Below the pieces are notes generated by a model. It ran no database searches and was not told where the DNA came from. It saw only the letters and a program-made list of their open reading frames with translations. From NCBI GenBank assembly GCA_002269645.1, contig NIVC01000112.1, positions 1-64,000 of the forward strand: a stretch of DNA of 64,000 nt, in the 5' to 3' direction. Position numbers and translations under genes: made by a program. Source of the stretch: Macrostomum lignano. Taxonomy: Eukaryota. Below are positions 2,664-64,000 of the stretch, in pieces; position 1 is the first letter of the stretch; each line of letters begins with the position of its first letter.

Positions 2664-2755
<92 letters not shown>

Positions 2756-2814
2756 GGCATTAAGACAGACACACACACAGACAGATAGACAGACAGATAG
2801 ACAGACAGACAGAC

Positions 2815-2851
<37 letters not shown>

Positions 2852-2878
2852 GGCATTAAGACAGACAGACACACAGAC

Positions 2879-2923
<45 letters not shown>

Positions 2924-2950
2924 GGCATTAAGACAGACAGACACACAGAC

Positions 2951-2989
<39 letters not shown>

Positions 2990-3006
2990 TAGACCGACAG
3001 ACACAC

Positions 3007-3043
<37 letters not shown>

Positions 3044-6210: not shown

Positions 6211-6255
<45 letters not shown>

Positions 6256-7564: not shown

Positions 7565-7601
<37 letters not shown>

Positions 7602-7620
7602 GCCTGTCTGCCTGTCTGCC

Positions 7621-7653
<33 letters not shown>

Positions 7654-7676
7654 GCCTGTCTGTCTGCCTGTCTGCC

Positions 7677-7721
<45 letters not shown>

Positions 7722-7740
7722 GCCTGTCTGCCTGTCTGCC

Positions 7741-7773
<33 letters not shown>

Positions 7774-7776
7774 GCC

Positions 7777-7809
<33 letters not shown>

Positions 7810-7828
7810 GCCTGTCTGCCTGTCTGCC

Positions 7829-7861
<33 letters not shown>

Positions 7862-7884
7862 GCCTGTCTGTCTGCCTGTCTGCC

Positions 7885-7929
<45 letters not shown>

Positions 7930-7948
7930 GCCTGTCTGCCTGTCTGCC

Positions 7949-7981
<33 letters not shown>

Positions 7982-7992
7982 GCCTGCCTGCC

Positions 7993-8030
<38 letters not shown>

Positions 8031-8064
8031 CCTGTCTGCCTGCCTGTCTGTCTGTCTGCCTGTG

Positions 8065-8109
<45 letters not shown>

Positions 8110-19527: not shown

Positions 19528-30148
<10,621 letters not shown>

Positions 30149-34600: not shown

Positions 34601-36886
34601 GGCAGGCCTGCCCGACACTAGTGCCGATTCATCGCCAACTCCGCCGTCTAGGTAGATGACGCACCGGATGTTGGGCATCTGATCCAGCATCTTGGTGACC
34701 TTGTCCAGCAGGCTCAGCGAGGTCACCAGCACTGCAGCCTCCGACTGGTTGACGCCGTAGGCCAGGGCATCCTCGCCCAGGCTGGCGTACAGCGTCACCA
34801 CGGGCAGGCCGCAGCGGAAGCAGGCCTGAGCGCACAGCTGCCAGTCTGCCCGGGTCTCCGCGTACAGAGCCACCCGAACGCCGGGCCTGAGGCCGAGCTG
34901 CTGCTGCCGCTGCGAGCGGAGACTCTTGGCCAGTTGAATAACCCGACGGTGAACTGAGCGATAACTCAGCCAGCTGTAGGGGCCCAGCGACTGCTTCTTG
35001 AACTTGCGACCGTCTGGTTGAAGCTGGTGAGGGGGTTCAGATGTCGATGGCTCAGTCACGGGGTTGAGAAACTTTTCGTTATGATAGTTAGATACGCTGG
35101 GAGTCTATGATGACTCTTTGACTAAATGAGTGACTCTATGACTAACGGAGTGACTCTATGACTAACGGAGTGACTCTATGACTAACATAGTGACTCTATG
35201 ACTAACGGAGTGACTCTATGAATAACGGAGTGACTCTTTGACTAAATAAGTGACTCTATGAATAACGGAGTGACTCTATGACTAACGGAGTGACTCTATG
35301 ACTAACGGAGTGACTCTATGACTAACGGAGTGACTCTATGACTAACGGAGTGACTCTATGACTAACGGAGTGACTCTATGACTAACGGAGTGACTCTATG
35401 ACTAACGGAGTGACTCTATGAATAACGGAGCGACTCTATGACTAACAGAGTGACTCTATGACTAACGGAGCGACTCTATGACTAACAGAGTGACTCTATG
35501 ACTAACGGAGTGACTCTTATGACTAACAGAGTGACTCTATGACTAACAGAGTGACGCTATGAATAATGGAGTGACTCTTATGAATAACGGAGTGACTTTT
35601 TGACTAAATGAGTGACTCTATGAATAACGGAGTGACTATGATTACTGTAATGATTTCATGACTGCTTGGATGACTGAGACTTCATGACAATCAAATTGAC
35701 CTCATGACTATGAACTGTGGCAAACACTGACTAAATAACAAGGACTCTATAGAAATTTACAACAATCCGAATTCAATCTACGTATATTAAGCAATCAAGC
35801 CCTAAAAGCAGATTACGAGCGTACAAATAAAATCTTGATCATTTTCATTGGTTTGTAATGAAAATTTTCAAAAAGTCACCAAAAAGCCAAAAATCAAATT
35901 CAAAGTGTTCGCTAAAATATTTAGACTAAAAAATTCAGGCCAAGTGTGAATTATCAGCACACAGTTAGCTCGTACAGCAGCCCTTCAAAGCAAATTAATT
36001 GCAATTTTGAGAAGCAATTTTGCCGCTAAGCAAGCGCAGGTGAATTGCACAGCCAAACAGAGTTAATATCTGTATGTATGCAGTACCTGAACTGTCAATG
36101 GGACAGTCTGTGACTGTCTGAGCTGGTGTGCGATCTAAATCTGAAAATTTTTTATACAGTCATGTTTAATAAGGAAGATGCAGAAATGCAATTTGGGATC
36201 CAATGAATGTCTTAAATAACTGTCTGTCTGTCTGTCTGTCTGTGTGTCAGTCTGTCTTTCTGTCTGTGTCTGTCTGTCTGCCTGTCTGCCTTAGTGTCTA
36301 TCTGTCTGTCTGTCTGTCTGCCTTAGTGTCTGTCTGTCTGTCTGTCTGTCTTAGTGTACCGATCAGTCTGTCTGTAATGAAACAGTTCAGATTCAGGCCA
36401 ATTAAAAATTCAACAAACCTGCTATAAAGTTCACAAAGTCCCTCAACTATTGAACTTACAGTTACTCAAAATACGAGCAATATCAATCGACCAGCATTAG
36501 AAGCTCACCTCGTCTGCCTCCGCCAGCAGCTGCCGGGTGCCAAAGCAGCGCCGCTCGGGGTACTTGCCAGCCGCTTGATCCAGCAGATCTGCCAGATTCT
36601 CAACTCCGGCAAAGGGCCTGCTAGCCAGACAGTCAGGCACTGACTTGCCAGTCTCCGCAGCCGCCTGCGCCACAGCTGAGCTGGCCCACACAGCTGGGCA
36701 GCTGCCATCTTCATCAGTTCCCGGATAGTCAACTTTCACGGTAGCTACTACAGCCTGTTGTTTGCTACTACTAACAGTAGTCGAATTTGGCCAAAATGTC
36801 AAATTAGCGGCATAGTATAGAGGCAGTGTGACTAGACTGTACAATCCTGATACTGCATCCATAGACCAGATTAAAAAGTTTTGCAT
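31657..36886 (-). CDS. ACSL3: Long-chain fatty acyl-CoA synthetase, ACSL3/ACSL4 type, 5 exons
   Basis: Exons 36886-36509, 35023-34235 (LMYTSGSTGQPKG, YLAYLPLAHVLEL), 33782-33565 (1-nt shift near 33655), 33121-32645 (SGGAPLS, QGFGLTETCG, WFCTGDVG, IVDRKKDLVKLQ), 32121-31657 (GEYVSLGKVE..LVTDSFKLRR). ACSL3 versus ACSL4 cannot be resolved. Confidence 0.9.
32165..32590. repeat. Intronic minisatellite, 41 bp unit
   Basis: GATAGCTCACTGATATTCCAGATTAGAACAAAGACTAATTT, about ten copies. Confidence 0.93.
33130..33420. repeat. Intronic degenerate ~15 bp repeat (TGTGGGATTTT..)
   Basis: Directly visible. Confidence 0.85.
33800..34205. repeat. Intronic minisatellite, 42 bp unit
   Basis: GATCTTGCCGACAACTAATTAGTTAGAATAACTGGACTCTTT, about nine copies. 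Confidence 0.92.
35100..35640. repeat. Intronic minisatellite, 20 bp unit ACTAACGGAGTGACTCTATG
   Basis: Directly visible. Confidence 0.94.
36220..36372. repeat. (CTGT)n microsatellite in ACSL intron 1
   Basis: Directly visible. Confidence 0.9.
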
Positions 36887-41791: not shown

Positions 41792-43828
41792 TCAGGCAGT
41801 CTTGGCCGGCCTGGCGAAGTCCTCGGGCATTGGCAGGGCCGGGCAGGGCCACAGAAACTGCAGCAGGCCGCAGCGGCCGAACACCCTGGCGCAGTTTCGC
41901 CTGCAGCTGCCCAGCGACATCTTCGGCGCCGACACCTCGGCGAACTCGTGCGGCGTCTGGCCGCGGCAGACCAGCAGCAGTTGGAAGAAGAAAAAATAAA
42001 AGCTCGCCAAAACGCCGAATAGCGTAGCGAATAACAGCGTCACCATGGCAACCACTGAAGCGTCGGCGTTGCCGGTAGCATACAGAACGACAGTAATGGG
42101 ATAAAAGTACATCCAGATATTCACGGACAGGGCTGGCTGGAACACCCTGGCCAGGTACAGGTACTGCAGACAGACGCACAGGCTGCTGCCCAGCAACACA
42201 TGGAGCATCAGGGGGAGGAAATGCCGGCGGTTGCACCGGCCGATGCAGCAGGCGGTGAAGAAGCAGTGGTGGTCGTGGCCGAGGACGCACACGCGGCAGA
42301 GTGGGCAGTGGTGCGCGCCGGGTGGCCTCTTGGCCCGGCAGTGCAGGCAGAACTCCGCGTTGGCCAATCCGGAGTAGCCCAGAACGGTTGAGGACCCGTT
42401 AGTTGACGCCGGAGTGCGAGCGAAGGCCGTGCTGGTGGCGCTGTTGCGGCGGGATGTGCGCAGCACAGCGAAATAGTTGGCCAGAACCTGCGGGTAGGCG
42501 GTTTTGCCGGTTATGACGCCTGGGACATTTCTTGGAAAATGAATAGATTTTTCTATGAAAAGATATATAAATCATGGGTTCTTCGAAACAAATCCGACGA
42601 TTCTTAGAAACTAACCAGACGATTCTTGGAAACCAACCTTGCTATTCTTAGAAACTAACCACATAATTCCTAGAAACTAACCACATAATTCCTAGAAACT
42701 AACCACATAATTCCTAGAAACTAACCACATAATTCCTAGAAACTAACCACATAATTCCTAGAAACTAACCACATAATTCCTAGAAACTAACCACATAATT
42801 CCTAGAAACTAACCACATAATTCCTAGAAACTAACCACATAATTCCTAGAAACTAACCTGACGATTCTTAGAAACTAACCAGACGATTCTTAGAAACTAA
42901 CCAGACGATTCTTAGAAACTAATCAGACGATTCTTAGAAACTAACCAGACGATTCTTAGAAACTAACCTGACGATTCTTGGAAACTAACCAGACGATTCT
43001 TAGAAACTAACCAGACGATTCTTAGAAACTAACCAGACGATTCTTTGAAACCAACCTTGCTATTCTTAGAAACTAACCAAATAATTCCTAGAAACTAACC
43101 AAATAATTCCTAGAAACTAACCACATAATTCCTAGAAACTAACGACATAATTCCTAGAAACTAACCTTACGATTCTTGGAAACTAACCAGACGATTCTTA
43201 GAAAATAACCAGACGATTCTTGGAAACTAACCTGACGATTCTTGGAAACTAACCTGACGATTCTTGGAAACTAACCAGACGATTCTTAGAAGCAAAAATC
43301 ACTATTCTCAGTAAGTTTACTTCAGGTTTTTGCTTCAAATTATTTGATGATTTTCATAAATCAAGTTGAACTGTTACTACGAAACGAATCTAACAGATTC
43401 TCGTGAACGAATCCAGGTGATTCTAAGAAATCGAAACGAATTAGATCGGGAAATTCTTAGAATCGAATCAGAGATTTTTTGAAGCGAATAAGATCGACTT
43501 TTAGAAACTTTTTATAGTTACTTCGAGAAAAGTAATCAGGCCGTTTCTTAGAAATAAAATAATTTTAGAGCAATTATTCATTTTTCATGGTCTTATTACT
43601 ACACTGTTCCGAAAGAGTGGAAGCTCAGGTGTCTAGATAAGATATTCTTACCTCGGCTATGACACAGTACAGCAGGAGCCGCACACAGCCCGGACTCGCC
43701 AGATCCCCATCCGCTGACAGTCTCGGCAGCACCAGCAGATCTGCGGTGAAGAAGCAGGCAGCAGTGACGCCGAAAAAGTACACCACACCGGCCGCGTTTA
43801 ACAGGTTGAGGCTGAGAGCGCGCTCCAT
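41792..43828 (-). CDS. ZDHHC22: DHHC palmitoyl-S-acyltransferase, ZDHHC22/24 type, 2 exons, ~290 aa
   Basis: Exons 43828-43652 and 42487-41792 join in phase 0. Cys-rich domain FCLHCRAKRPPGAHHCPLCRVCVLGHDHHCFFTACCIGRCNRRHF, hydrophobic segments, and a TTxE-like QTPHE. DHHCFFT favours the ZDHHC22 group. Confidence 0.85.
42590..43290. repeat. Intronic minisatellite, 22 bp unit (C/T)TAGAAACTAACC(ACATA/AGACG)ATTC
   Basis: Two variant blocks visible. Confidence 0.93.
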
Positions 43829-45105: not shown

Positions 45106-47559
45106 ATGAAGCTACCAAGTGTTCTCCTGTCCTACCTGAGCATACTGCTCCTAGCAAAATCGGCGCAAGGAAATTTCACGGCCAAACAAAAGCGAATCCT
45201 GCAAGACATCTACCAGGTAGTAGCGCAAGATTTTCACTACAGGCGACATGAATGGAACTCCTTAGCTGTGAGGTACACAGGATTTTTGCACTTCTTTGGC
45301 ACCAGTTGGCGCTTAGTAACCAGACTCGGCGGCACGTACAGCGTGGGCTCGTCCACCTACTACAACCGGTGGAACTGGGACCAGGCGCTAGAAGAGTCCA
45401 CTGAGCTTCTGCGCAGCCTAGAAAGGTACCACCGAGTCTATAGACACCTCAGCTGGAATGGAGACAAGGAGCTTCAAGCCGAGTGGTACAAGCGCAATCC
45501 CAGGCACTGGTCGGACGCTGTCACCTTTCTAGACTTTATGTCGAGTCGGTCTGGCCAGCTGCACAATCCGGCAGGCGCTGAGGTGCCGGGCTATTTATCA
45601 GCCGATCGTAAACAATATGACGAGCTGCTTCGACTCGCCTACAGCGGCTATACTGCCTGTCCCTCAGCTCTGGCCAACGTCACCCGTCAGCTGTTGGATT
45701 CGACAGTCCAAATAATCAATGAAACCAGCCGTCAAGTGGACGCGATGCTTTACGAAGACGAACCATTGTCAAGAAACCTATCGGACTCAACGAACACTTC
45801 AATTGCAGACGACGCAGTCATACAACTAGTGTCGATAACAAGCGAATACAACCTCCTGTCTGGCCTAGTCTGGGACACAATGCCAGCGCTGATAGCTAAC
45901 TATTCCCAATCGATAGCAGACTCGCCAGCGGGCTGTCAGAATCGCACAGGCCCGATGTCGACAGAGCAGCTGACCAGTCGAGCTAACAACATTAGCCATG
46001 CCGTGGCTAGCCTAGGGCGACAAGTGCTGGCCCACGTGCTGCTTTTTATGCAGCACTATCAGGAGCACTGGTCTCAATGCTGCACTGATAACAAGATTTC
46101 CGAACCCGATCTCACTAATGAGCAGCGGGCGAGTCTACTAGCATTCTATTGCCGCGTATTGCAAGAAGACATTGACAAAGACTTAGCTAGGCACCTGGAG
46201 ACGGGCGAGATGACGCAGCTAAGGCAGCTGTTGGCTACTTGCAATCAGGCGACGGTCACTGGCGGCAGATGCTACAGCATTCTGGCCGACCTCTGGCATC
46301 AGCTGCGGAGGAAGATATCTCGCGAGTACTCGGCCTTTCAGCAGTACTCAAACCGCATACCAGCCATCCTGCAGGCGAAATCAATCATGAAGTTTGTCCT
46401 CCCAATGCTGGCCGTGGTTGGCTCCAGCCTCAACTTCGTCATCATATTGTATTACGCCAGACATACGCAGGTACGAAAGGTTGGTCGCAATTTTTTAATA
46501 GTATTGCTGGCCTGCTTTGACACTAGCATACTTATCGCATCGAACTTGGTTTTATTCACCGACAAGTACATGGAGCACGATCAAGAATTGAAGCCTAATG
46601 GAGCAACAGATATCTGGTGCAAATTTCAAGTCTATTTACTAAACCTAACAGTTGAATCTAGCGCATTCACGGTGGTAATCCTCAGCATAGAACGTTTCCT
46701 AGCCGTCCACTCGCTCTTCAGACAGACTTCATCAACAGGCGCACGCAAAGAGCTGCCATTCAGGCAACTGGCCATTCTGTCATTGTGCGCATTCTGCTTT
46801 GCCTGCATATTTAACTGCATGCTGATCATCGGAGACGAAATCGCTGCACCGGCTAAGTCAACAGTTGGCCGCCAGTGCGTCCAGTACGTCAGGCTGCAAA
46901 ACTTTCGCACCAATTTAGCATTTGTAACGCTGGTAAAGCCGGTGTTAAACGCTCTGGCCAGAAGCCTCCTGCCTTACAGTTTGGTCTGCGCTCTCAGCCT
47001 GGCAACCTGTTGGTTGCTATTCAAGAAAGGCGCTTATCAGAGTTTGCGCAACGAAGAGCACGGAATGCAGCAGCAGATGGAGGAACCAGCGGTACCTGCA
47101 TCGCCAATGCAACAGCAACAGTATCAGCAGGATGGCCAGCTAAGCAGAGCAATTGGTCAGTTGGGTCTGGCGCTTGCCTACCTGGTGCTTACAGCTCCAG
47201 CGCCTGTGATCTACACAATGTTCATGACGGCTCACGCGGACCGTCTCATAGTTAAACTGTCCAACGGCCTGTACGACGAAGTAGATCCGGCATTTCGAAC
47301 CCACTGGAGCCGCATCGGGCAGCTGACGGTGGCTCAGTACGCCACAGAGTACGTGCTGGTACCGCTTAGCGCGTCTATCAACTTCTGGGTATTCTACATC
47401 ACTGACAGGTCCTTCCGAACTTATGTCAATGGCTGCTTCGGCTCAGCCAGAGGTTCCGCAACGGTTGCAACAGGCGACTACGACGAGGGGATGGCAGCGG
47501 CAGCGGATGCCAACGAGGAGTTGACCGACTGCTATGAACTGCACACGGAGACTCTGTGA
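45106..47559 (+). CDS. Intronless class A (rhodopsin-like, peptide-receptor type) GPCR with signal peptide and very large ectodomain, 817 aa
   Basis: Uninterrupted ORF. Signal-like MKLPSVLLSYLSILLLAKSAQG. Seven hydrophobic segments start at ~aa 428, with GSSLN (TM1), LACFD (TM2), WCK..SIERFLAV (TM3), LPY (TM5), VLTAP (TM6) and SINFWVFY (TM7). Confidence 0.88.
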   Translation: MKLPSVLLSYLSILLLAKSAQGNFTAKQKRILQDIYQVVAQDFHYRRHEWNSLAVRYTGFLHFFGTSWRLVTRLGGTYSVGSSTYYNRWNWDQALEESTELLRSLERYHRVYRHLSWNGDKELQAEWYKRNPRHWSDAVTFLDFMSSRSGQLHNPAGAEVPGYLSADRKQYDELLRLAYSGYTACPSALANVTRQLLDSTVQIINETSRQVDAMLYEDEPLSRNLSDSTNTSIADDAVIQLVSITSEYNLLSGLVWDTMPALIANYSQSIADSPAGCQNRTGPMSTEQLTSRANNISHAVASLGRQVLAHVLLFMQHYQEHWSQCCTDNKISEPDLTNEQRASLLAFYCRVLQEDIDKDLARHLETGEMTQLRQLLATCNQATVTGGRCYSILADLWHQLRRKISREYSAFQQYSNRIPAILQAKSIMKFVLPMLAVVGSSLNFVIILYYARHTQVRKVGRNFLIVLLACFDTSILIASNLVLFTDKYMEHDQELKPNGATDIWCKFQVYLLNLTVESSAFTVVILSIERFLAVHSLFRQTSSTGARKELPFRQLAILSLCAFCFACIFNCMLIIGDEIAAPAKSTVGRQCVQYVRLQNFRTNLAFVTLVKPVLNALARSLLPYSLVCALSLATCWLLFKKGAYQSLRNEEHGMQQQMEEPAVPASPMQQQQYQQDGQLSRAIGQLGLALAYLVLTAPAPVIYTMFMTAHADRLIVKLSNGLYDEVDPAFRTHWSRIGQLTVAQYATEYVLVPLSASINFWVFYITDRSFRTYVNGCFGSARGSATVATGDYDEGMAAAADANEELTDCYELHTETL

Positions 47560-48419
47560 ACCCTGCGATATCTATGACCTTATATAACCGTGACTATTTG
47601 ACAATTTCACTTAAGTCACATGACACTGAAGCCTCCTGGCAATTTTTTCTTGAACCGTGAATATTTGCACTTTAAAATGTTTCTGTGAAAACTATCATCA
47701 CGCATCTAAAAACTTTGTACACTCTTTATTATTTATAAATATATCCTAGCAAGCACACTTATGAAAGCACTGATGAAAATAAAAACGTTGCTGGAAATCT
47801 TCAGATAGATTTCCTTGGCATAATTCTGATTTAAATATAGTCTAGAAAAAATAAAGCTCGGCAATAAGACCGTGTCTAAGAGACAGATTATATCACTTCA
47901 TCTTCTGCAATCCTATTTGCGTGTCGCGATGATTTAAATAGCAATAAACTGAAAAAAAAACTCGGAAAATTTCAAAGCTGAATCAAGATGAAGGATTTAA
48001 TCACGTAATCAGAATGTATATTTAGAACTCAGCTTCGTAATCAGCAACGAAAGCTCAAACATACAGCCCTAATTATTGGGGACACGAGATTTGCCCGCAG
48101 ACGAATTGCCCGCCGAGGTTTGCCAGCAATGCTTTTTCCCTGCAGCGCATTGAGCTACAGATGTAGTTAAAAAATGAATGGCTCACAGATGCGCCCCTCT
48201 ATGTATATGGAAATGAAAAAATACAAGAAGAATATGCATTTAATATGCAGTTACCATCAAAACGTTTTTATCGGGTAAATCTTTTATTAAGAATTACTAA
48301 GCATTGGATGGGGGCAATGCAGAAATAATCAGCCACGTGGCAAAGTGCGCTGCAGCAAAAAAGCATTGCGGGCAAACCTCGGCAATTCTCTCATCATCTC
48401 TTTTCCCGTACCTTCATCT

Positions 48420-49290
48420 TCCCTGATCCCATCTCTCTCTTCTCTTATCCCTCACTCTCTTCCCGTATCCCCACTCTTTTCCCTTATCCCTCACTCTCTT
48501 CTCTTATCCCTCACTCTCTTTCATTATCTCTCACTCTCTTCTCTTATCCCTCACTCTCTTCCATTATCCCTCACTCTCTTCTCTTATCCCTCACTCTCTT
48601 CTCTTATCCCTCACTCTCTTCCATTATCCCTCACTCTCTTCTCTTATCCCTCACTCTCTTCCCTTATCCCTCACTCTCTTCTCTTATCCCTCACTCTCTT
48701 CTCTTATCCCTCACTCTCTTCTCTTATCCCTCACTCTCTTCTCTTATCCCTCACTCTCTTCTCTTATCCCTCACTCTCTTCCCTTATCCCTCACTCTCTT
48801 CTCTTATCCCTCACTCTCTTCCCTTATCCCTCACTCTCTTCTCTTATCCCTCACTCTCTTCCCTTATCCCTCACTCTCTTCTCTTATCCCTCACTCTCTT
48901 CCCTTATCCCTCACTCTCTTCTCTTATCCCTCACTCTCTTCTCTTATCCCTCACTCTCTTCTCTTATCCCTCACTCTCTTCCCTTATCCCTCACTCTCTT
49001 CTCTTATCTCTCACTCTCTTCCCTGATCCCTCACTCTCTTCTCTTATCCCTCACTCTCTTCCCTGATCCCTCACTCTCTTCTCTTATCCCTCACTCTCTT
49101 CCCTTATCCCTCACTCTCTTCTCTTATCCCTCACTCTCTTCCCTGATCCCTCACTCTCTTCTCTTATCCCTCACTCTCTTCCCTGATCCCTCACTCTCTT
49201 CTCTTATCCCTCACTCTCTTCCCTGATCCCTCACTCTCTTCTCTTATCCCTCACTCTCTTCCCTTATCCCTCACTCTCTTCTCTTCATTC
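48420..49290. repeat. Pyrimidine-rich minisatellite, 20 bp unit CTCTTATCCCTCACTCTCTT
   Basis: Directly visible; explains ORF 48345-49226. Confidence 0.96.
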
Positions 49291-50899
49291 TCTTCATTCT
49301 CTTCCCTGATCTTCCATTCTCACACCTATCACTCTTCACTCGTAGCTCGCAGATTCGTAGATTATTGTTCACTTATTTCCATATCTAATAAAAGTTTTAT
49401 TTAATTTATCATTTCCCTATCAAAATTACCGGGATTACATAAAAGTGGACAGAAATCGGAAAGCCTGAACAAGAAGCAACAGTGTCGGGTATTAAAAGCA
49501 CAGCCAAGAGAGAACGAAGACTCCAAAGCAAACTCAGGCGTGACCCTAAAATCTGGGAGCTTCCCCGCCCCAGAGAAAAATGTAGACGGGGAGACAAGGG
49601 AGATAGAGACCAGGGCGCGAACAAACAAGGCAATCCGAGCTTAGCCGAGTGGAAAACTCGGGCTCTAAGGGGGGAAAGGGAACAGGGAGGCCAAACTAAC
49701 CAAAATTTTAATCAAATTCAGCACAGCGAGCGGCGGGATCCTTCAGCCAGCCGTGGCAGCCGCCCCGAGTCCTCCTGACACAAGCTTGTCCTATCCAGCA
49801 ATTTCTAATCCCACATCCCAAACTCTTCTTCCTTGCTTTTGATGAGAGAAATCTCTGTTAAAAAATCTAAATCAGAGTTTCTAAAAAGTCTGTTTAAACT
49901 CCCATATGCCAAGGACTAAGGAGGAAATTTCCCCGATAACTTTTTTGGTTTTGTTGCACAAAAAAATCCAAAAGATTATTGCTTAGTTAGAATTATATAG
50001 GAATATAAGTCGGCTGTCAGCAGTTTCATTAAATTTTAGAAGCCTATAATGGCTCTCTATTTTGGTCTCTAGCAGCAAAAATGTTGAGAATTTTCATCTC
50101 TTGCCCATTGCACTGACCCCTGAGCTCATGACAGGCAGGCAAATACTCAAAGCTGGCCCTGCCTGATTCATGCTCACACAAGATGTGCAGTGACCCTATG
50201 CTGCTTTTCTCCTATCTCTTGAACTTTAAATTCTGTGCATATACCTTAGTTGCAATCTAATTTATAATTACAAAAAAAGAATAATTTTTATTCATGTACT
50301 ACCACTAGTAGCATATTATGGTAATAATTGCATAAATTTTTATATTAAAAGTGGAAAAGGATAATTTACTAAAAACTCTAATGTTCATTGTTCAACCATA
50401 AATATGGCTATAGAATATAACAAAATATTGCATGAGCAATAATAGCTAGTAGATACACTAAAAAACTTATAAATCTGAATATATAACACTTGTAGTTTGA
50501 ACTTTTTAGTTTATAATTTTTTTTCTAAAATGTAGATATTTACAACTCTAGTATAATAGGTTTTTACTGTTTAAAAACTATAAATTAAACATTTTTTTAA
50601 ATTATAGGTCTAACACAGATCAATGTGAAAGTTAAAATAATATTACAATGACAATTAGTGAAAAAAGCATAGTTTATTATCCAAAATAGAATTCTGTAAT
50701 ACTAATTTTTGTTTGCTACTTTTTTGTCTACTAATATTCATAGAGTCATTTTTTCTACTCATTTGGGTCATTTCTTCTGCTATAAAAAACTCCAATACAA
50801 GATTAATGAACTTAGAAAAGGGTTCTAGTCTCAATGTAAGAAGATTTCTTAATAATTTTTGCTTACCTTCAGATGTTCCAAGATGTTAAGATGTACAAT

Positions 50900-52660
50900 G
50901 AAGTACATATAAATGTAGATATACATGTAGGGCTATATATATAATTCAATAGATTCCTAAGTGCTACACTTTGATTTTGTATACTAATGCATTGTTAATT
51001 TTATTATATCTATGTATAAAGTATAAAATTATTACAACAATATACAAAGCCATTTAAAAAATACTACTTTTGTTCAAACAAGTAAATTAATATATTATAT
51101 TAATTGAACTTTTGAACCTTTTATTTAATTTTAAGCCTATCCTGTGGGTGCAAAACCATATAACTAGGACCTATATCATATTTGTCTACTAGTAAAAGTT
51201 CTTACATTTGCTTGAAAGGTGGCAAACAAAATCACTATATACTAAATAGGCCTACTATTAAGGCTAAAGGAAAAAAACATTTTTTTTTCAAGATGCAAGA
51301 ACAATGTAATAAACTATTTTTTTCTATTCTCAAGGCTTAATCAATTTTTTATATTAAAAATATTTAAATTTTTTATATTTTTTTATTGTTCCTATTTTTT
51401 ATAATAGGTTAGCTTTGTTGCCTCTAGTTATAAAACAACATATTAATATGCATAAGTATATCCATTAAAAAAACAAAAATTAAGATATTGGCTTTACTAT
51501 AGCAAAATTAGCAAAAAACCTTTTTATAGGCCTTTTATATAGGCCCATATTATATACCTATATGCCCCTTATTAGTAGCCAAGGGTCAACTTATACCAAA
51601 TGTTTCTTTTAAATACAAGAAAGTTGAAACAGTAAATATACTAGATAAAGCCAATTGTCTCCTATTTTTCTTTGCTAAAGATGCTTGACACTTTGAGCCT
51701 TAGTAGAATAGTATGCCAAGAAATTATTAAATCTAATAGGAATCTAGTAGGAATTGGACCATAATTAAAAACTTCAATAAAGGTTCCCATGGCTTGCCAA
51801 TATGTATATAAAAAGCAAGTTTGAATAGTGTTTTTTGCAAATGTTTGGCTTTGCTTATATATGGTCATAAAATAATAATAAAGAATAAAAAGCAAATATA
51901 AGTTACAAACAATAGAAAAATCTTGTTCTAATATTGTAAAGTATTTTTATACTTTTTTTATAGATAAAACCAATAGATATAGAAATATACATCTGACTTT
52001 CATTTAGATGATAAAAAACTATATAAAATTTTTCATAAAAAGATAGGCCTATTAAAAAATGGTAACACACAAAAAGAAACTTGCATTTTTTAAATTGAAT
52101 AACATTGTCAAAGCTAGCATAAGATAGCATAAAAAGCCTTTATAAAATGCAAGAACAATGTAATAAACTATTTTTTTCTATTCTCAAGGCTTAATCAATT
52201 TTTTATATTAAAAATACTTAAATTTTTTATATTTTTTATTGTTCCTATTTTTTTATAATAGGTTAGCTTTGTTGCCTCTAGTTATAAAACAACATATTAA
52301 TATGCATAAGTATATCCATTAAAAAAACAAAAATTAAGATATTGGCTTTACTATAGCAAAATTAGCAAAAAACCTTTTTATAGGCCTTTTAGTCTTATGC
52401 ATTTCAAGCTTAAGGCTAACTTTTTTAGGTTTTATTGCAAAGGTTTTGGCTATTCTGGTTATATTAGATTTACTTGTTTGAACAAAAGTAGTCTTTTTTA
52501 AATGGCTTTGTATATTGTTGTAATAATTTTATACTTTACATATAGATATAATAAAATTAACAATGCATTAGTATACAATTCAAAGTATAGCACTTGGGAA
52601 TCTATTGAATCATATATATAGTCCTACATGTATATCTACATTTATATGTACTTCATGTAT
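50900..52660. repeat. AT-rich composite: ~190-bp inverted repeats (50900-51087 / 52470-52657) enclosing ~245-bp direct repeats (51293-51537 / 52146-52390)
   Basis: Both repeat pairs are readable by eye with few, mostly transition, differences. Confidence 0.8.
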
Positions 52661-52847
52661 TAGATTTATTTTATCAATAGATAAATAAGAGATAAAGAAG
52701 CTAAAATATTAGACCCTAAGCCTAGCTTAGGCCTAAGCATTGAAATTGGTTTTTAAAAATATTAAAATGTTAATAGGCTTAATAAACAATTTTTCAATCA
52801 AAAATTATTAGGCCTAAGCCTATTTGCCTATAGTACTCAATAGTACT

Positions 52848-53436
52848 TGTTGTATGCATATGCGAATTATTTGTCTATGTGCAAAACCATCTGCCCCCAT
52901 TTATATGTTGACCCCAAACAAGCAACCAAATATATTAACTCATTTTCAGCCTAGCACCAATTACTGTGGCTTAATGCCAAGAACATAACATGGTGTTGCA
53001 AGCAGGATTACATGGTCAAGTTAGTAAGCGACCAAATTTTCTGTCCCAATTGCGTGTACATCCACCAATGTCTACTACTAGAACAGCTCTCTACTACTGG
53101 TGTATCTCAGAAGCAAGGTGAAGCACAAGAGGCCCTAGACAAGCCAAAGACCGTATAGCCAAGGCAAAGTCAATGGTCAACAAGGGAGTCCCGGCATCCA
53201 AGTTGCATTACAAGAAGTTGGATGAACCAGTTAAAGCTTAAAAGGGGAGATAAAGAAGAAAGAACTGTAAAATTGATTTGCTTAAAAGGGGAGATATTGT
53301 ATGCATATGTGAATTATTTGTCTATGTGCAAAACCATCTGCCCCTATTTATATGTTGACCCCAAACAAGCGACCAAATATTTAACTCATTTTTGGCCTAG
53401 CATCGATTACTGTGGCATAATGTCAATAAAATAACA
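52848..53436 (+). mobile_element. Miniature LTR retroelement (TRIM-like), 589 bp
   Basis: LTRs at 52848-52990 and 53295-53436 (TG/TA...ACA ends). PBS-like TGGTGTTGCAAGCAGGATT starts at 52991. Polypurine tract AAAAGGGGAGA at 53284-53294. 5-bp target duplication GTACT (52843-52847 / 53437-53441). No internal coding capacity. Confidence 0.85.
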
Positions 53437-53493
53437 GTACTATAGTATAGTAAGCCTACTCAATAGTACAGATAGTACTCAATAGGCAAAATA

Positions 53494-54279
53494 GGCTCAT
53501 TCCATATAAGATGGACATATTTGGAAAATAGAAAAAAGTCAATATTTTTGCTTGCCATTGCCTAATTAGCCTATTTTTTTACCAAATGTTTATATTGTGC
53601 AATATATACAATCTAAGAATAAAGGAATGGTAAAATGTTGGATTAGTATGTTATCAATTGGCAAAAAGTCATTTTTGTAAAAATTTGGACATTTTTCGAA
53701 GCAAAAGACATCATTAAGATTTTGTACCTTTTAAAAACAAATAGAAAGCTTTTGAAGGTTGAAACAAACTATAGATAAAAGTATAGTACTTGCATCATCA
53801 GATAAAAGCATTGGTGACCAAATAATCTATTATATTTTTAATGTATTAGTACCTCAAAGTTACTGAATTGACAGAAAAAATATGTTACGACCATAATGTT
53901 ACGACTATAAGGCTGCCTTTTCTTTTGTATCTTAGTTGCCTTTTGAGTTTATATATTCTAATAAAAGAGTATGATTTCTAAAGATGTTCTTAGTCAAATT
54001 TTAAAAATGTATTGCAAAATATCAAAAATGAAAAATGTTATAAGACTTTTACCTTTCAGTTTCTATATGTCAAAAATCCTGTCGTTACGACCATAAGTGT
54101 CATTTAAGGTTTAATAGCATCTATACTAATGATGATATCTATAATGAAACTCTATAAATATATTCTAGACAAAATAATCTTTCATTTAAAATATTGGTTT
54201 AGTATATTCTATTATTAGATTTCATTTTATAAGTAAAAATAACCTGTCATGTTACGACCATGCTTATATGGAATGAGCC
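53494..54279. mobile_element. MITE-like element with 17-bp TIRs GGCTCATTCCATATAAG
   Basis: TIRs at 53494-53510 and 54263-54279; internal repeated GTTACGACCAT motif (53884, 54085, 54251). TSD unclear. Confidence 0.6.
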
Positions 54280-55259
54280 ATTAGACCTATAAAAAAGTTA
54301 ACATTTAAGATAGGCCTCAAGTTAGGCCTATATAAAAAGTTTTGTAGCTATTTATTACCCATAGGCCTAGTCTGAAGGAAGATGCAATAGAAGTTAAGAA
54401 TAATAAATTAGTAGGCCTACTTGACAGTTTTTAAAACAACAAAAGGTGTTTCTTTATTCTAGTAAAAAAATTATCAAATGGAATAAAGCATTGCTAAAAA
54501 AGGCCCAAATTTCAAAATCTCCCAAGACTAAGTCCTTAACTAAGTTAGGGCCTGACTTAGTCTTGGGAGATTTTGAAAGGCCCTAATTGGTTCTAATATT
54601 GTCCCTAATAGCATAGGGCCTAACTTAAAAGTCTTAAACAGTCAAGATAGCTAGGCCCTAGTGCTGTTTTCTGGGGAATTTTCCTTTACAGAAATGGATT
54701 TGACAAGGCCCACTACTTATTCTGGTGCAGAGAGGATAGCAGGCTATCTACCTAAATTTCTGGACTGATACAAATCCATATGGAATCACTGGAATGGCAT
54801 TGGCATTGGTACAGCTGTACAGCAGGTGCAGGATATCTACCAATATCTATCTAGACTCTAGACTAGAGCCATAGTCATAAATATACTCCCCCTATATGTC
54901 ATAGGCCTATATTTATATGATATTCCTATTCAAATCAATATTTTTACAGTAGTACAATAATAGAGCGATTATAAATGATGTAATATTAGGCCTAAGCCTA
55001 ATATAATGTAGCACCATGGCCTATTTCCTAATTTCTAATGATCCACCGTCTGCGCGGGGAAAAACTTCGCTTTCTTGCGTCAAAAGATGACACACGGCTT
55101 AACTAATATATATGATGGAGGCCTAATATAGAGCTGAACCCTGGGACCTGCCGCCCTGGGGCTCCAGCCGGCTAAGCCGGGATATAAGTGCGTATATATG
55201 CCGTATGGGTTTCTTAGAAAGTTTCGTATCAAATTAGAATCTTTTTTCTTCGTCTCGAC

Positions 55260-57429
55260 CACAGATACTATAAACACTAGATAGGCCACTCCAGCTAATT
55301 TTCACAACACGACAGTTTACTCTACTTTCTGCTTAGTAGTAGTAAAAACATTTTAGCGTTATTTATATTTTTTAAAAATAAAAAAACAGATGAATGCAAT
55401 GCAGCAATTGTATTGATTTTTTTGCAAAAAGAAACTTATAATTATACTTTCCACAATTCAAAGCAACATTGTGAATGCTTTAGATTGCATAGAAGGCTAT
55501 ATTATTGCAGTCAACTATTGTATATTTAGCAAATACGAGCTATATCATATACTCCATAATCCATATTCGTGTAGCAAAATAGAAAGATTTCTCATCTTAA
55601 TCAGCTCATCTGTTTGTGAAACTCGCAGCGTGCTGTTGAAGAACAGGGTCGCCAGTCGCCCTTGTTCAGAGGCAGCATTCAGAACGGCCCAACAGATGAA
55701 AAAAAACTGGCGAATGCGCCACTTCAAGGTCCAGGGATGTATCCGATGGAGAGCCAATCCTCAGTGGTTTCGTAACAGGCAGCCGATAAGCAGCAGGACT
55801 TTTGTGGTGCAGCTGCAATGAGCTGCTGATGAGATGACATCCTTTGACCAGAGCACCCCTGACTGCGAGCGCCCTGCCGCCCAGTCGACCGCTGGAAGCT
55901 GCGCTAGCCACGCCTCCACAGTCCATGGATGCACGACTGCGCTGCACTTGCCTTGACCATCGAATGTTGCCGCTGCAGCCGCTTGATTTGCCTGTCGCTT
56001 TCGGGATTGCCGCTGCAGCCGCTTGATTTGCCTGTCGTTTTCGGGATTGCCGCTGCAGCCGCTTGATTTGCCTGTCGCTTTCGGGATTGCCGCTGCAGCC
56101 GCTTGATTTGCCTGTCGTTTTCGGGATTGCCGCTGCAGCCGCTTGATTTGCCTGTCGCTTTCGGGATTGCCGCTGCAGCCGCTTGATTTGCCTGTCGTTT
56201 TCGGGATTGCCGCTGCAGCCGCTTGATTTGCCTGTCGCTTTCGGGATTGCCGCTGCAGCCGCTTGATTTGCCTGTCGCTTTCGGGATTGCCGCTGCAGCC
56301 GCTTGATTCGCCTGTCACTTTCGGCCTCGGGATCGTTGCTGCAGCCGCTTGATCGTTGCCTCTAGCGCTTGGAACCCGCGAATCGGCTGCAGAGGTGAGA
56401 GCTTTCAGCCGCAACAGCTGTTCTCGGCGCAGAATCTGGTAGCCGAAGGTTGCTCTGCCACAGCACTGGCAGCAGGCAAGTCGCAGGCTCGGCTGCAGAT
56501 AGATTGCTAATTGGCCCCAGCACTGGAGGGTACATGTCGTCTGCCTCTTCATCGTTTATCAGTCCTTTGCACAGAGGGTAGCTGGTCTATTTGAACGAGC
56601 CGAGGCAGCATCAACTCTTGGTGTGGGATTGCGTCCCAGCGAAAACAGATGTCTTGCACATCCGTGGCACTTTGTAAGGCAGCAGTAGGCCTCGTCCATA
56701 AAGTGCAAGCTGAACACACGGAGGCCCCGTGATTTAATTGTTTATAAAGGTCAATATCCACGCTCCTGCAGTAGCTGCTGCCAGCGCTTCGCCAGTGTCA
56801 TCTTTTGGTAATTTATGCATTCGCAACGGATTTTTCTTTCTCGGATGTTAATAGCACTAGTACAAAGCTCGTGCAAGTGGGAGCACAGCAGTGGTTCGAA
56901 TCAAAACATTTCTCGAGTACAAGATTAGATAGAAAAGCTAGTATGCACTCGAACTTTCTTTAACTCTGACTCTTGTCCTGTTCATCTATATAAGCTTGTA
57001 TTTAAGCACGATTCGCCACCCCCAAATTTTCTAACCCACAACCTCTCAACCCCCACCCCTAACCCAGGCTAGCTATGTGCAGTCCTTTATTTTCTATCCC
57101 ACCACCAGTGGGCCTAAATTATCGATCCACTCACCCTGCCTTATACGAAACTGATATTAACCCTATTCCAGACTACCCCCCTTCCTCCACTTTGAAAGAT
57201 AGCGGCATTGCACACTGTCTGTCGCGTCTTAATGTACACCATTACTGCACAAAACAAGTTAGTTGTTTATGGCGTTAGCAAAACGATGTCTTAAAAACAG
57301 TCACTCGATTTGTCTAATTTAGCAAATAATACTGTTGCTTCCTTTCATTGCTACTAAGCAGAAAGTAGAATAAAAAACTTGCCCAGAAAATTAGCCTGAG
57401 TGGCCTATCTAGTGTTTATAGTATCTGTG
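55260..57429 (-). mobile_element. Non-autonomous P-element-like DNA transposon with a decayed THAP domain and an internal 40-bp tandem array
   Basis: 44-bp TIRs CACAGATACTATAAACACTAGATAGGCCACTC.. (55260-55303 / 57386-57429, 2 mismatches). Flanks GTCTCGAC / GTTTAGAT may be an eroded 8-bp TSD. THAP motifs across frames at ~56620-56900: NHCCAPTC, MHKLPKD, KRWQQLL, VCS-(L)HF, RWDAIP. Confidence 0.75.
55965..56320. repeat. 40 bp tandem array (TTTCGGGATTGCCGCTGCAGCCGCTTGATTTGCCTGTCG[C/T]) inside the P-like element
   Basis: Period 40 (GCTTGATTTG at 55981, 56021 and onward), about eight to nine copies. Confidence 0.95.
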
Positions 57430-58767: not shown

Positions 58768-59316
58768 AAGAAGCCCATTTGAATAGGAAACTTAGTACAC
58801 GTAGACTAGCTAATTGCATGTAGTTGTCAGCGCAGCGTCATCTGATCTACATGTACATATATATCGCTTCACCCCGATACATCAGCTTTAGCTCATCCTG
58901 AAACTCCGCGGCACCGCGATACATCAGCTATAGCTCATCCTGAAACTCCGCGGCACCGCGATACATCAGCTATAGCTCATCCTGAAACTCCGCGGCACCG
59001 CGATACATCAGCTATAGCTCATCCTGAAACTCCGCGGCACCGCGATACATCAGCTATAGCTCATCCTGAAACTCCGCGGCACCGCGATACATCAGCTATA
59101 GCTCATCCTGAAACTCCGCGGCACCGCGATACATCAGCTATAGCTCATCCTGAAACTCCGCGGCACCGCGATACATCAGCTATAGTTCATCCTGAAACTC
59201 CGCGGCACCGCGATACATCAGCTATAGCTCATCCTGAAACTCCACGGTGCCGCGGTACAAGATCAAAAGACGCTGACAACTACGTGTACTAAGTTTCCCA
59301 TTCAAATGGGCTTCTT
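58768..59316. mobile_element. TIR-bounded element enclosing nine 42-bp tandem units
   Basis: AAGAAGCCCATTTGAAT(A/G)GGAAACTTAGTACACGTAG..TTGTCAGCG is inverted at 58768-58848 and 59260-59316. Internal unit GATACATCAGCTATAGCTCATCCTGAAACTCCGCGGCACCGC spans 58877-59255. Confidence 0.8.
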
Positions 59317-62680: not shown

Positions 62681-64000
62681 TCACTCAGTGTAACTCTTCT
62701 TCTCGTGGATCTTCTTGATGACGTCAATCTTGCTGCTGAGACCGCTCCTCAGCTTCTTGTAGGGCTGCTCCTGGGTTCCGTGGATCACCAGAACCCATTC
62801 GCTGATCACTCCGTGGACGCTGGCGTCGGTGGCATCAAGGGCGACCTTCAGCTTCCATTTGCCGCGAGGTGACTCGCCCCACATGTGCGTCGTCATGAAG
62901 GGCCAGGAGGTAAATCCAACCTTGCTGTCCGCGTCCTTCGGGCGCTTGCTCAGGATGAGCGAGGTCGTACCGGTCGGGGCAGTCAAGAACACGGTGACGT
63001 CACCGCGCCTGGTGGACTTCAGCGTGATGAAGGCCTGCACGTGCTCGATGTAGTTGATGCGGTGCTTCGGATCGTCCTTGCAGGCGTCAGTATCGATTTC
63101 CATCTCGATGGCATTCTGCACGTTGAAGTGGTAGAGCCTCTTCACTTCGCCAGCGATGCAGTGGAATCGCTCCGGCACAGTCTTCCAGTCCCTGGCCGTC
63201 TTCACGATGTCGCCAGCGTCAAGAACTCCGTAGCCGAACAGGTGGTTGAACTCCAGGCCGGCTGAGTTGACAGTCCAGTCGTGCTTGCCGTTCGGATCGT
63301 ACAGGTGGTTTCTCTTGGAGGTCAGGACCACCAGGTGCTGCATGTCGCGCCAGGTCAGGTTCGAATTGGCCTCCAGGGCCAGAGCAAACACGCCAGCGGC
63401 CTCGGGAGCGGCGGCGCTGGTGCCGCTGTGATGCAGGGTGCACTTTCCGTACAGGTCAACCGTGGCAACTCCAGCGTCCAGAGTCGAAGCCTTGCCATTG
63501 GAGAAGGTAGAGGCCAAGGTGGAGGAGCAGGACTCATCGTACAAAGCGGTCTCGCCATCGTTGGTGGCAGAGTTGATGCTGATGGTCCACATGCTGGCGG
63601 CGTAACCATCGCAGTTGCAGTCGTCGTCCGGACCACCGTCTCCGCTGGCCCACACGAAGATGCTGCCCTTGCCGTTCCTGCCCTTGTTGACGCCCTCAAC
63701 GATGGCGCGCATCGTCTCGTTGCGCGGACCGTCGACAGTTTTGCCATCGTCAGTTGGGCCCCAGCTGGCGGAGTAGATGTCAATGATGTCCCGCTTGTAG
63801 GACATGGCGGCCGCCTCGATCAAGTCGGTCATGTAGGGCTGGTCGAGCATCCTAAGGCCGGCAATTTTGCTGCCGTAGGCAACACCGACACCGCAGATTC
63901 CGTTATCACGCTTGGACGAGATTTCGCCGGCGCAGCGGGTGCCGTGGCTGTTGAACCAGTCGTCGGTGTAGCGCGGGTAGGGGTACGGATCGTTGCTGCT
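62681..64000 (-). CDS. PCSK2: Prohormone convertase 2 (catalytic and P domains), 5' end beyond the window
   Basis: A continuous frame reads SSNDPYPYPRYTDDWFNSHGTRCAGE (catalytic His), VWASGDGG (PC2-specific Asp in the oxyanion hole), HSGTSAAAP (catalytic Ser), RRGD in the P domain, and KKSYTE*. Confidence 0.96.
   Translation of the reverse strand, partial: SSNDPYPYPRYTDDWFNSHGTRCAGEISSKRDNGICGVGVAYGSKIAGLRMLDQPYMTDLIEAAAMSYKRDIIDIYSASWGPTDDGKTVDGPRNETMRAIVEGVNKGRNGKGSIFVWASGDGGPDDDCNCDGYAASMWTISINSATNDGETALYDESCSSTLASTFSNGKASTLDAGVATVDLYGKCTLHHSGTSAAAPEAAGVFALALEANSNLTWRDMQHLVVLTSKRNHLYDPNGKHDWTVNSAGLEFNHLFGYGVLDAGDIVKTARDWKTVPERFHCIAGEVKRLYHFNVQNAIEMEIDTDACKDDPKHRINYIEHVQAFITLKSTRRGDVTVFLTAPTGTTSLILSKRPKDADSKVGFTSWPFMTTHMWGESPRGKWKLKVALDATDASVHGVISEWVLVIHGTQEQPYKKLRSGLSSKIDVIKKIHEKKSYTE

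What the first reader, a model, noticed from the sequence alone, without database searches (positions are those of the whole stretch)
52848..53436. Structurally complete TRIM-like miniature LTR retrotransposon
Seen: 143/142-bp LTRs, a PBS abutting the 5' LTR, a PPT abutting the 3' LTR (with a second GCTTAAAAGGGGAGATA copy upstream), a perfect GTACT target duplication and a 304-bp non-coding interior. Inference: the PBS resembles the complement of a tRNA-Ser 3' end after C-to-T/G-to-A changes (from memory). Established: TRIMs are common in plants and rarely described in animals; one family is known from taeniid tapeworms. This may be an undescribed animal TRIM family mobilised by a Gypsy-type partner.
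Basis: partly seen in the sequence, partly recalled or inferred. Interest (0 to 1): 0.72.

Follow-up and report, generated by a model that had tools for sequence, protein, structure and literature searches.

The report
Old miniature LTR retrotransposon in Macrostomum
This is a real but old and probably dead 589-bp non-coding LTR retrotransposon with textbook TRIM anatomy in the flatworm Macrostomum lignano; such elements are not yet reported in this species but are known in several other animal groups, and its copy number, primer tRNA and helper element could not be checked.

Summary
Window 52848-53436 carries two direct repeats of 143 and 142 bp (90.9% identical). The 5' LTR has TG..CA ends, and TGG abuts it, opening a 19-nt tRNA-like primer binding site. 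An 11-nt polypurine tract abuts the 3' LTR, a second 17-mer copy lies 44 bp upstream, GTACT flanks both ends, and the 304-bp interior is non-coding.

The window is Macrostomum lignano contig NIVC01000112.1:1-64000. The element fits every structural criterion of a TRIM. It is old (LTR K2P 0.091), and its 3' LTR now starts TA instead of TG.

The only other copy found is the same insertion in a near-identical assembly duplicate (2 differences in 669 bp). About 150 kb of M. lignano DNA, two protein-collection searches and DNA scans of public collections gave no independent copy, no gag/pol remnant, no host tRNA and no partner. Whether it belongs to a multi-copy family or is a one-off deletion derivative therefore stays open.

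The tRNA-Ser guess is not supported: the inferred discriminator base is A, which fits tRNA-Leu at least as well. The Gypsy-partner idea is untested.

TRIMs are already known from ants, taeniid tapeworms, bivalves and, as Helenus/Ajax, several further phyla. If this is a family, it is a new member of a known kind. Interest is low to moderate.

The parts
52843..52847 (+). Left target-site duplication, GTACT
   Evidence: Identical pentamer at 53437-53441. The reconstructed empty site ...CAATAGTACT|ATAGTATAG contains the palindrome ATAGTACTAT.
52848..52990 (+). 5' LTR, 143 bp, TGTT...AACA
   Evidence: Aligns to 53295-53436 at 90.9% identity, BLAST E = 1e-52. No tRNA- or 5S-like module.
52991..53009 (+). 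Primer binding site candidate, TGGTGTTGCAAGCAGGATT
   Evidence: Abuts the 5' LTR. Its complement AATCCTGC-TTGCAAC-A-CCA has the invariants of a tRNA 3' end (A58, C61, C72, A73, CCA; read from the sequence). No self-priming complement of 7 nt or more in the LTR. Host tRNA not identified.
52991..53294 (+). Non-coding internal domain, 304 bp
   Evidence: ORFs of 48 aa or less lie wholly inside it. Six-frame search of the whole element against 5.8 billion proteins gave no hit. The RNA fold is no more stable than shuffles (z = +2.1).
53236..53264 (+). Upstream exact copy of the PPT-containing 17-mer GCTTAAAAGGGGAGATA, followed by the purine run AAAGAAGAAAGAA
   Evidence: D10, 100% identical, 44 bp spacing; purine runs. 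Possibly a second plus-strand priming site; this is inference.
53280..53294 (+). Polypurine tract region GCTTAAAAGGGGAGA (11-nt purine run at 53284-53294) abutting the 3' LTR
53295..53436 (+). 3' LTR, 142 bp, TATT...AACA (the terminal TG is mutated to TA)
53437..53441 (+). Right target-site duplication, GTACT

Best explanation
This is a fossil insertion of a small non-autonomous LTR retrotransposon with TRIM architecture, of the canonical pol II type, in Macrostomum lignano.

Inferred life cycle, following the standard LTR-retroelement mechanism:
1. An RNA starting in the 5' LTR and ending in the 3' LTR was packaged by the Gag/Pol of an unidentified autonomous LTR retrotransposon.
2. Minus-strand synthesis was primed by a host tRNA annealed to the 19-nt PBS that abuts the 5' LTR.
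3. Plus-strand synthesis started at the polypurine tract that abuts the 3' LTR.
4. The helper's integrase inserted the cDNA into a palindromic AT-rich target and produced the 5-bp GTACT duplication.

The copy has since decayed. The LTRs are 9% diverged, transitions sit at CpG sites, and the 3' LTR terminus is TG>TA, which would give progeny a defective integrase end. It is most likely no longer mobile.

What is shown: the anatomy, the host, the age relative to local duplications, and the absence of coding sequence. What is inferred: mobilisation in trans as a miniature element, a tRNA primer (tRNA-Leu-like is as good as tRNA-Ser), and the existence of sibling copies.

The confidence of 0.6 is for the whole statement, including arrival as a miniature element. 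That it is an LTR-retroelement insertion at all I put above 0.95.
For: - LTR pair, TG..CA ends, PBS, PPT and TSD all sit at canonical positions.
- The dimensions (589 bp in all, LTRs 143/142 bp, interior 304 bp, 5-bp TSD) fall inside the TRIM definition quoted.
- No coding capacity and no gag/pol remnant in any frame.
- The element is 39% GC inside a 26-29% GC block, as expected for inserted DNA.
- The target site is palindromic, as integrase targets tend to be.
- The same insertion is present in the 99.4-99.9% identical duplicate locus L003, with 2 differences in 669 bp. LTR divergence (0.091) exceeds the 2.4-4.7% divergence of the older duplicate L001, so the insertion is old.
- The host genome is 21% LTR retrotransposon, with 137 or more curated autonomous families that could act as helpers.
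- The published M. lignano surveys could not have detected such an element: LTRharvest was run with -mindistltr 1000 and unclassified repeats were dropped, and DARTS starts from an RT domain.
Against: - Only one independent insertion was seen. There was no second copy or solo LTR in about 150 kb of M. lignano DNA (window, L001, L003, L008-L010).
- That sample only excludes very high abundance, roughly more than 19,000 copies.
- No host tRNA was available to validate the PBS.
- No autonomous element sharing termini, PBS or PPT was found. The single Gypsy element examined differs.
- No empty site could be examined, because the older duplicate's equivalent site lies beyond the end of L001.
- No transcript evidence.
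Confidence: 0.6

Rival explanations
1. This is a one-off deletion derivative. A full-length autonomous LTR retrotransposon inserted here, made the GTACT duplication, and later lost nearly all of its interior by illegitimate recombination. Only the leader after the PBS and the stretch before the PPT remained. Under this reading there is no TRIM family propagating as a miniature element.
For: - Only one independent copy was observed.
- The genome is rich in LTR retrotransposons that could decay in this way.
- The copy is old (K2P 0.091), which leaves time for deletion.
- The negative protein searches are equally expected if only UTR sequence survived.
Against: - No trace of gag or pol in any frame, although random deletion endpoints often leave coding fragments.
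- The dimensions match typical TRIMs closely.
- Both PBS and PPT are exactly retained, along with a duplicated PPT motif.
- None of these points is decisive.
Confidence: 0.3
2. This is not a retroelement. It would be a local segmental or tandem duplication, or an assembly artefact, that happens to look like LTR-interior-LTR.
For: - The window is full of tandem arrays and local duplications. One example is a 249-bp direct repeat 854 bp apart at 51290/52144 that lacks LTR hallmarks.
- GTACT is locally frequent.
Against: - TG..CA termini, TGG plus tRNA-like invariants directly after the 5' repeat, an 11-nt purine run directly before the 3' repeat, and a flanking 5-bp duplication all occur together at the exact repeat boundaries.
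- The neighbouring 249-bp repeat shows none of these features.
- The structure is present in two separately assembled contigs.
Confidence: 0.03

Closest known systems
Plant TRIMs (Witte et al. 2001 definition, as quoted in PMC6934838 and PMC10886601)
   Same: Total length under 1 kb. Terminal direct repeats of 100-250 bp. The internal domain starts with a PBS and ends with a PPT. 5-bp TSD. No coding capacity.
   Different: No sequence relationship is expected. Plant TRIMs use a tRNA-Met PBS, and this PBS is not tRNA-Met-like. The host is a flatworm.
ta-TRIM of taeniid cestodes (PMC4558846)
   Same: Flatworm host. Non-coding LTR-PBS-PPT-LTR miniature element with TG..CA ends. Candidate class II tRNA primer with discriminator A (ta-TRIM uses tRNA-Leu).
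   Different: ta-TRIM has LTRs of about 198 bp, an interior of about 590 bp, a PBS 4 nt from the LTR with 9 nt of complementarity, a PPT 3 nt from the LTR, and mostly 4-bp TSDs. It was reported as taeniid-specific, with no similar sequence in other flatworms. Here the LTRs are 143 bp, the interior is 304 bp, the PBS and PPT abut the LTRs, and the TSD is 5 bp. Sequence similarity was not tested because no ta-TRIM sequence was at hand.
PbTRIM of ants (PMC3532108)
   Same: Size range 480-781 bp and LTRs of 152-184 bp. The PBS lies immediately after the 5' LTR. Insertion into AT-rich DNA.
   Different: PbTRIM makes 4-bp TSDs (often ATAT), has a tRNA-Leu PBS of about 15 nt, and is abundant and young. 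Here the TSD is 5 bp, and the only copy seen is old.
Helenus, Ajax and Cassandra ('TRIMp3', PMC10886601)
   Same: Small non-autonomous LTR elements with PBS and PPT. Ajax (nemerteans) also makes 5-bp TSDs.
   Different: Those carry a tRNA- or 5S rRNA-derived pol III module in the LTR. None is detectable here (permissive Rfam scan, best E = 4.8).
biv-TRIM of bivalves (PMC6934838)
   Same: Animal TRIM with terminal direct repeats, a short inner domain and a PPT.
   Different: biv-TRIM lacks a recognisable PBS. This element has a well-formed one.

Membership tests
TRIM (terminal-repeat retrotransposon in miniature) | Total length under about 1000 bp | tested here: met
   589 bp, 52848-53436
TRIM (terminal-repeat retrotransposon in miniature) | Two terminal direct repeats of about 100-250 bp with TG..CA ends | tested here: met
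   143 and 142 bp, 90.9% identical, E = 1e-52. The 5' LTR is TG..CA. The 3' LTR is TA..CA, one substitution at the terminus.
TRIM (terminal-repeat retrotransposon in miniature) | PBS next to the 5' LTR, complementary to the 3' end of a host tRNA | tested here: inconclusive
   TGG abuts the LTR, and the 19 nt have tRNA 3'-end invariants (sequence). No M. lignano tRNA gene was found in any DNA at hand. Scans for the inferred tRNA 3' end gave only non-tRNA chance hits.
TRIM (terminal-repeat retrotransposon in miniature) | Polypurine tract next to the 3' LTR | tested here: met
   AAAAGGGGAGA at 53284-53294 abuts the LTR
TRIM (terminal-repeat retrotransposon in miniature) | Target-site duplication flanking the element | tested here: met
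   GTACT on both sides. The local chance of a match is about 1-1.5%.
TRIM (terminal-repeat retrotransposon in miniature) | No coding capacity for Gag or Pol | tested here: met
   Longest ORF is 70 aa. No protein similarity in any of six frames against 5.8 billion proteins, or for the 70-aa ORF against 1.84 billion representatives.
TRIM (terminal-repeat retrotransposon in miniature) | Dispersed multi-copy family whose copies have independent TSDs | not testable with these tools
   There is no DNA-level access to the M. lignano genome. The only other copy is the same insertion in a duplicate locus (L003). There is none in about 150 kb sampled.
TRIM (terminal-repeat retrotransposon in miniature) | Autonomous partner sharing LTR ends, PBS and PPT | not testable with these tools
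   The single Gypsy element available (L001 15264-19743) has termini TGTAGTG.., a different PBS region and the PPT GGAGGGAAGGGGAAAAC. The consensus sequences of the 137 published families are not held.
ta-TRIM (taeniid cestodes) | LTRs of about 198 bp, interior of about 590 bp, PBS 4 nt from the LTR, mostly 4-bp TSD | tested here: not met
   143-bp LTRs, 304-bp interior, PBS abutting the LTR, 5-bp TSD (compared)
TRIMp3 (Cassandra, Helenus, Ajax) | tRNA- or 5S rRNA-derived sequence (pol III promoter) inside the LTR | tested here: not met
   Permissive Rfam scan of 52700-53600 gave no tRNA or 5S hit. The best matches are unrelated families at E = 4.8 or worse.

The most novel reading that the evidence does not exclude
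The element is one member of an undescribed, multi-copy TRIM family of Macrostomum. That would be the first TRIM in a free-living flatworm. Every TE survey of this model organism missed it because of their search settings. It may be transcribed from its LTR in neoblasts or germline, as ta-TRIM is in Echinococcus stem cells.
Probability: 0.5. Interest if true: 0.4.

Novelty: new member of a known kind. Interest (0 to 1): 0.25.

Why it matters
- M. lignano is a transgenic regeneration and stem-cell model whose genome is more than half repeats. Its LTR-retrotransposon catalogues were built with methods that cannot see elements this small, so a class of non-autonomous elements may be missing from its annotation.
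- If a family exists, it would extend flatworm TRIMs beyond taeniid tapeworms.
- It would also give insertion markers for dating the recent genome duplication. This insertion appears to predate the local duplications.
- It would allow a test of whether stem-cell expression of TRIM RNAs, as in Echinococcus, is a wider flatworm trait.
- If it is a single decayed copy, it is an ordinary genomic fossil.

Tried and rejected
1. **Other copies in the window.** Self-BLAST at word size 7 found none.
2. **Empty-site test in duplicated loci.**
   - L003 carries the same insertion.
   - L001, the older inverted duplicate on the same contig, ends about 1-2 kb short of the equivalent site, inside an unrelated inverted-repeat element.
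   - Attempts to reach the site from the other side failed because the two neighbouring ORFs are not on record.
3. **Sibling copies through spurious ORFs.** The 70-aa LTR ORF against 1.84 billion representatives gave only a low-complexity hit. All six frames of the element against 5.8 billion proteins gave nothing.
4. **DNA scans of public collections.** The LTR core 20-mer had no match in JGI metagenomes or IMG/VR. The PBS junction gave two chance hits in phage coding sequence.
5. **Naming the primer tRNA.**
   - ARAGORN found no tRNA in any M. lignano DNA held.
   - The scan for the inferred tRNA 3' end gave two non-tRNA hits.
   - A full-text search for the PBS string returned only unrelated PCR primers.
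6. **Partner search.**
   - The RT in the window (15786-17153) is a LINE, with a YADD motif and no LTRs.
   - The Gypsy element in L001 does not share termini, PBS or PPT.
   - The supplement with the M. lignano family consensuses is not held.
7. **Small-RNA module in the LTR (Helenus, Ajax, Cassandra).** Rejected.
8. **Tf1-like self-priming.** Rejected; there is no complementarity of 7 nt or more.
9. **Structured interior RNA.** Rejected; z = +2.1.
10. **The neighbouring 249-bp direct repeat (51290/52144) as a second TRIM.** Rejected; it has no TG..CA ends, PBS or PPT.

Full report
**What is there.** Window 52848-53436 is a 589-bp unit with these parts.
- Two direct repeats: 52848-52990 (143 bp) and 53295-53436 (142 bp).
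- They align over their whole length with 130 of 143 identical columns, 12 substitutions (9 transitions, 3 transversions) and one 1-bp indel. BLAST E = 1e-52 and K2P distance = 0.091.
- The 5' repeat reads TGTTG...ATAACA. The 3' repeat reads TATTG...ATAACA, so one terminal TG has become TA.
- Directly after the 5' repeat comes TGGTGTTGCAAGCAGGATT.
- Directly before the 3' repeat comes GCTTAAAAGGGGAGA, which contains an 11-nt purine run.
- The 17-mer GCTTAAAAGGGGAGATA occurs a second time 44 bp upstream and is followed by another purine run. All purine runs of 9 nt or more in the element lie in the last 55 bp of the interior.
- GTACT flanks both ends.

The flanks contain a short TACTCAATAGTAC-type repeat. 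GTACT is therefore locally enriched, at 10-15 per kb, and a chance TSD has a probability of roughly 1-1.5%. The reconstructed empty site holds the palindrome ATAGTACTAT, which is typical of integrase targets.

**Coding and RNA features.**
- The longest ORF touching the element is 70 aa and runs through the 3' LTR.
- That ORF found nothing meaningful among 1.84 billion representative proteins.
- A six-frame translation of the whole element found nothing among 5.8 billion proteins. There is therefore no detectable gag/pol remnant.
- The interior does not fold better than shuffled sequence (z = +2.1).
- A permissive Rfam scan found no tRNA- or 5S-like module in the LTRs. The element is therefore not of the Cassandra/Helenus/Ajax type.
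- No stretch of the LTR is complementary to the PBS region, which argues against Tf1-like self-priming.

**The PBS.** Its complement, AATCCTGC-TTGCAAC-A-CCA, has the layout of a tRNA 3' end: A58, C61, a 5-nt T-stem strand, a 7-nt acceptor strand ending in C72, discriminator A73, then CCA.
- No M. lignano tRNA gene was present in any DNA I could reach.
- A scan of metagenome contigs for the inferred 3' end gave two hits that are not tRNAs.
- From memory, eukaryotic tRNA-Ser has discriminator G73 and tRNA-Leu has A73. Recalled human tRNA-Leu(CAA) and tRNA-Ser(AGA) 3' ends each match 14 of 19 positions.
- The ant and taeniid TRIMs both use tRNA-Leu. This is a lead, not a test.

**Host and context.** A furin-like exon in the window identified a neuroendocrine convertase 2 gene. 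Its encoding contig is NIVC01000112.1 of GCA_002269645.1, which is the Macrostomum lignano Mlig_3_7 assembly. Window coordinates equal contig coordinates 1-64000.
- The element sits in a 26-29% GC block and is itself 39% GC.
- It lies in intergenic DNA about 9.2 kb downstream of the convertase gene and 5.3 kb downstream of an unannotated GPCR-like ORF.

The convertase locus exists three times.
- L003 (NIVC01000111.1) is 99.4-99.9% identical to the window locus. It carries the same insertion with the same TSD and only 2 differences in 669 bp. It is a redundant or very recent duplicate, not an independent event.
- L001, an inverted duplicate at about 102 kb on the same contig, is 95.3-97.6% identical. 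It ends inside an unrelated inverted-repeat element before the equivalent site, so no empty-site test was possible.
- LTR divergence (0.091) exceeds the divergence between these duplicates. The insertion therefore probably predates both duplications.

**Copy number and partner.** Neither could be determined.
- About 150 kb of M. lignano DNA (window, L001, L003, L008-L010) held no further copy or solo LTR and no second instance of the PBS. This sample only excludes tens of thousands of copies.
- DNA scans of JGI metagenomes and IMG/VR were negative or gave chance hits.
- The RT in the window is a LINE.
- A full-length Ty3/Gypsy element found as a 4.6-kb insertion in L001 has different termini (TGTAGTG...), a different PBS region and a different PPT. 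I inspected only its ends.
- Published M. lignano surveys report 137 curated LTR-RT families, of which 129 are Ty3/Mdg4. A Gypsy-type helper is therefore the prior expectation, but nothing here tests it.

**Interpretation.** The combination of features leaves little doubt that this is an LTR-retroelement insertion. The open question is how it came to be so small.
- It may have arrived as a miniature element mobilised in trans, making it a member of a TRIM family. I put this at about 0.6.
- It may be a one-off internal deletion of a full-length element. I put this at about 0.3.
- The dimensions, the exact retention of PBS and PPT, the duplicated PPT motif and the absence of any coding remnant favour the first. 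Seeing only one independent copy keeps the second alive.
- Either way this copy is old. Its TA terminus in the 3' LTR would pass a defective integrase end to any progeny, so it is probably immobile.

**Comparison with what is known.**
- The element meets every structural criterion of a TRIM, as listed.
- It does not fit ta-TRIM in any quantitative feature: LTR length, interior length, PBS and PPT spacing, or TSD length.
- It lacks the pol III module of the TRIMp3 groups.
- Animal TRIMs are already documented in Hymenoptera, taeniid cestodes and bivalves. [quoted passage not shown]
- No paper in the library links Macrostomum with TRIMs.
- The two M. lignano LTR-RT surveys could not have found one. 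LTRharvest was run with a minimum LTR distance of 1000 bp and unclassified repeats were discarded. DARTS starts from an RT domain.

**Verdict.** The novelty is at most a new member of a known kind. Interest is low to moderate (0.25), rising to about 0.4 if a multi-copy, expressed family is shown.

Noticed in passing
window 55260-57429: A 2170-bp element with about 32-bp perfect terminal inverted repeats (CACAGATACTATAAACACTAGATAGGCCACTC; about 88 bp at 83%). It is present in the window copy. In both duplicate loci (L003 and L001) the 10-bp sequence ATCAAGTTTC stands in its place. It looks like a non-autonomous TIR-type DNA transposon that is polymorphic between duplicates 99.4-99.9% identical, which suggests recent movement. 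No clear TSD. It holds a 263-aa repeat ORF (55761-56552).
   Followed up: partly
L001 15264-19743 (NIVC01000112.1, about 107.2-111.7 kb): A full-length Ty3/Gypsy-type LTR retrotransposon: LTRs of about 244 bp at 98% identity, a gag with a zinc knuckle, a protease and a 772-aa RT-RH-IN ORF. It is inserted in the older duplicate and absent at the equivalent window site (about 59285), so it is a fairly young insertion. Only its termini were inspected.
   Followed up: partly
window 45106-47556 (+): An 817-aa uninterrupted ORF with a signal-peptide-like start and a weak rhodopsin-family 7TM match (7tm_1, E = 1.1e-9). It has no homologue at all among 5.8 billion proteins and is not on record as a called gene. 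It may be an unannotated lineage-specific GPCR.
   Followed up: partly
window 62681-64000 (-), L001, L003: The intronless neuroendocrine convertase 2 gene (634 aa) is present three times in the assembly. One copy is an inverted duplicate about 37 kb away on the same contig (95-97.6% identical). Another is on NIVC01000111.1 (99.4-99.9% identical). This fits the known redundancy and hidden polyploidy of M. lignano.
   Followed up: yes
window 15145-15396; L001 21300-21905: An inverted-repeat (foldback- or MITE-like) element occurs in the window, next to the LINE, and again as an insertion in L001 at the position equivalent to window 55193. The arms are about 83% identical between the copies.
   Followed up: no
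window 15786-17506 (+): A degraded, GC-rich (about 60%) non-LTR (LINE) reverse transcriptase split over two ORFs (RVT_1, E = 1.2e-29; YADD motif).
   Followed up: partly
window 51290-51537 and 52144-52391: A 249-bp direct repeat, 98.4% identical and 854 bp apart, in the AT-rich block just upstream of the TRIM. It has no TG..CA ends, PBS or PPT. Colinearity with L003 breaks at its edge, so it is probably a local rearrangement or another repeat type.
   Followed up: partly
window 50000-54500: A sharply AT-rich block (26-29% GC against 45% for the window), rich in AGGCCTA/TAGGCCT motifs, hosts the TRIM. The element's CpG observed/expected ratio is 0.31 against 0.70 for the window, and 3 of the 9 LTR transitions are at CpG sites.
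   Followed up: no
window 1300-2100, 2600-3100, 6000-8300, 9500-11500, 12900-13800, 22700-24100, 25500-27000, 32100-32650, 35000-35600, 42500-43400, 48300-49300, 58870-59260: Very many minisatellite arrays (periods 8-42 bp) generate long spurious ORFs. This matches the reported 15% tandem-repeat content of the genome.
   Followed up: no
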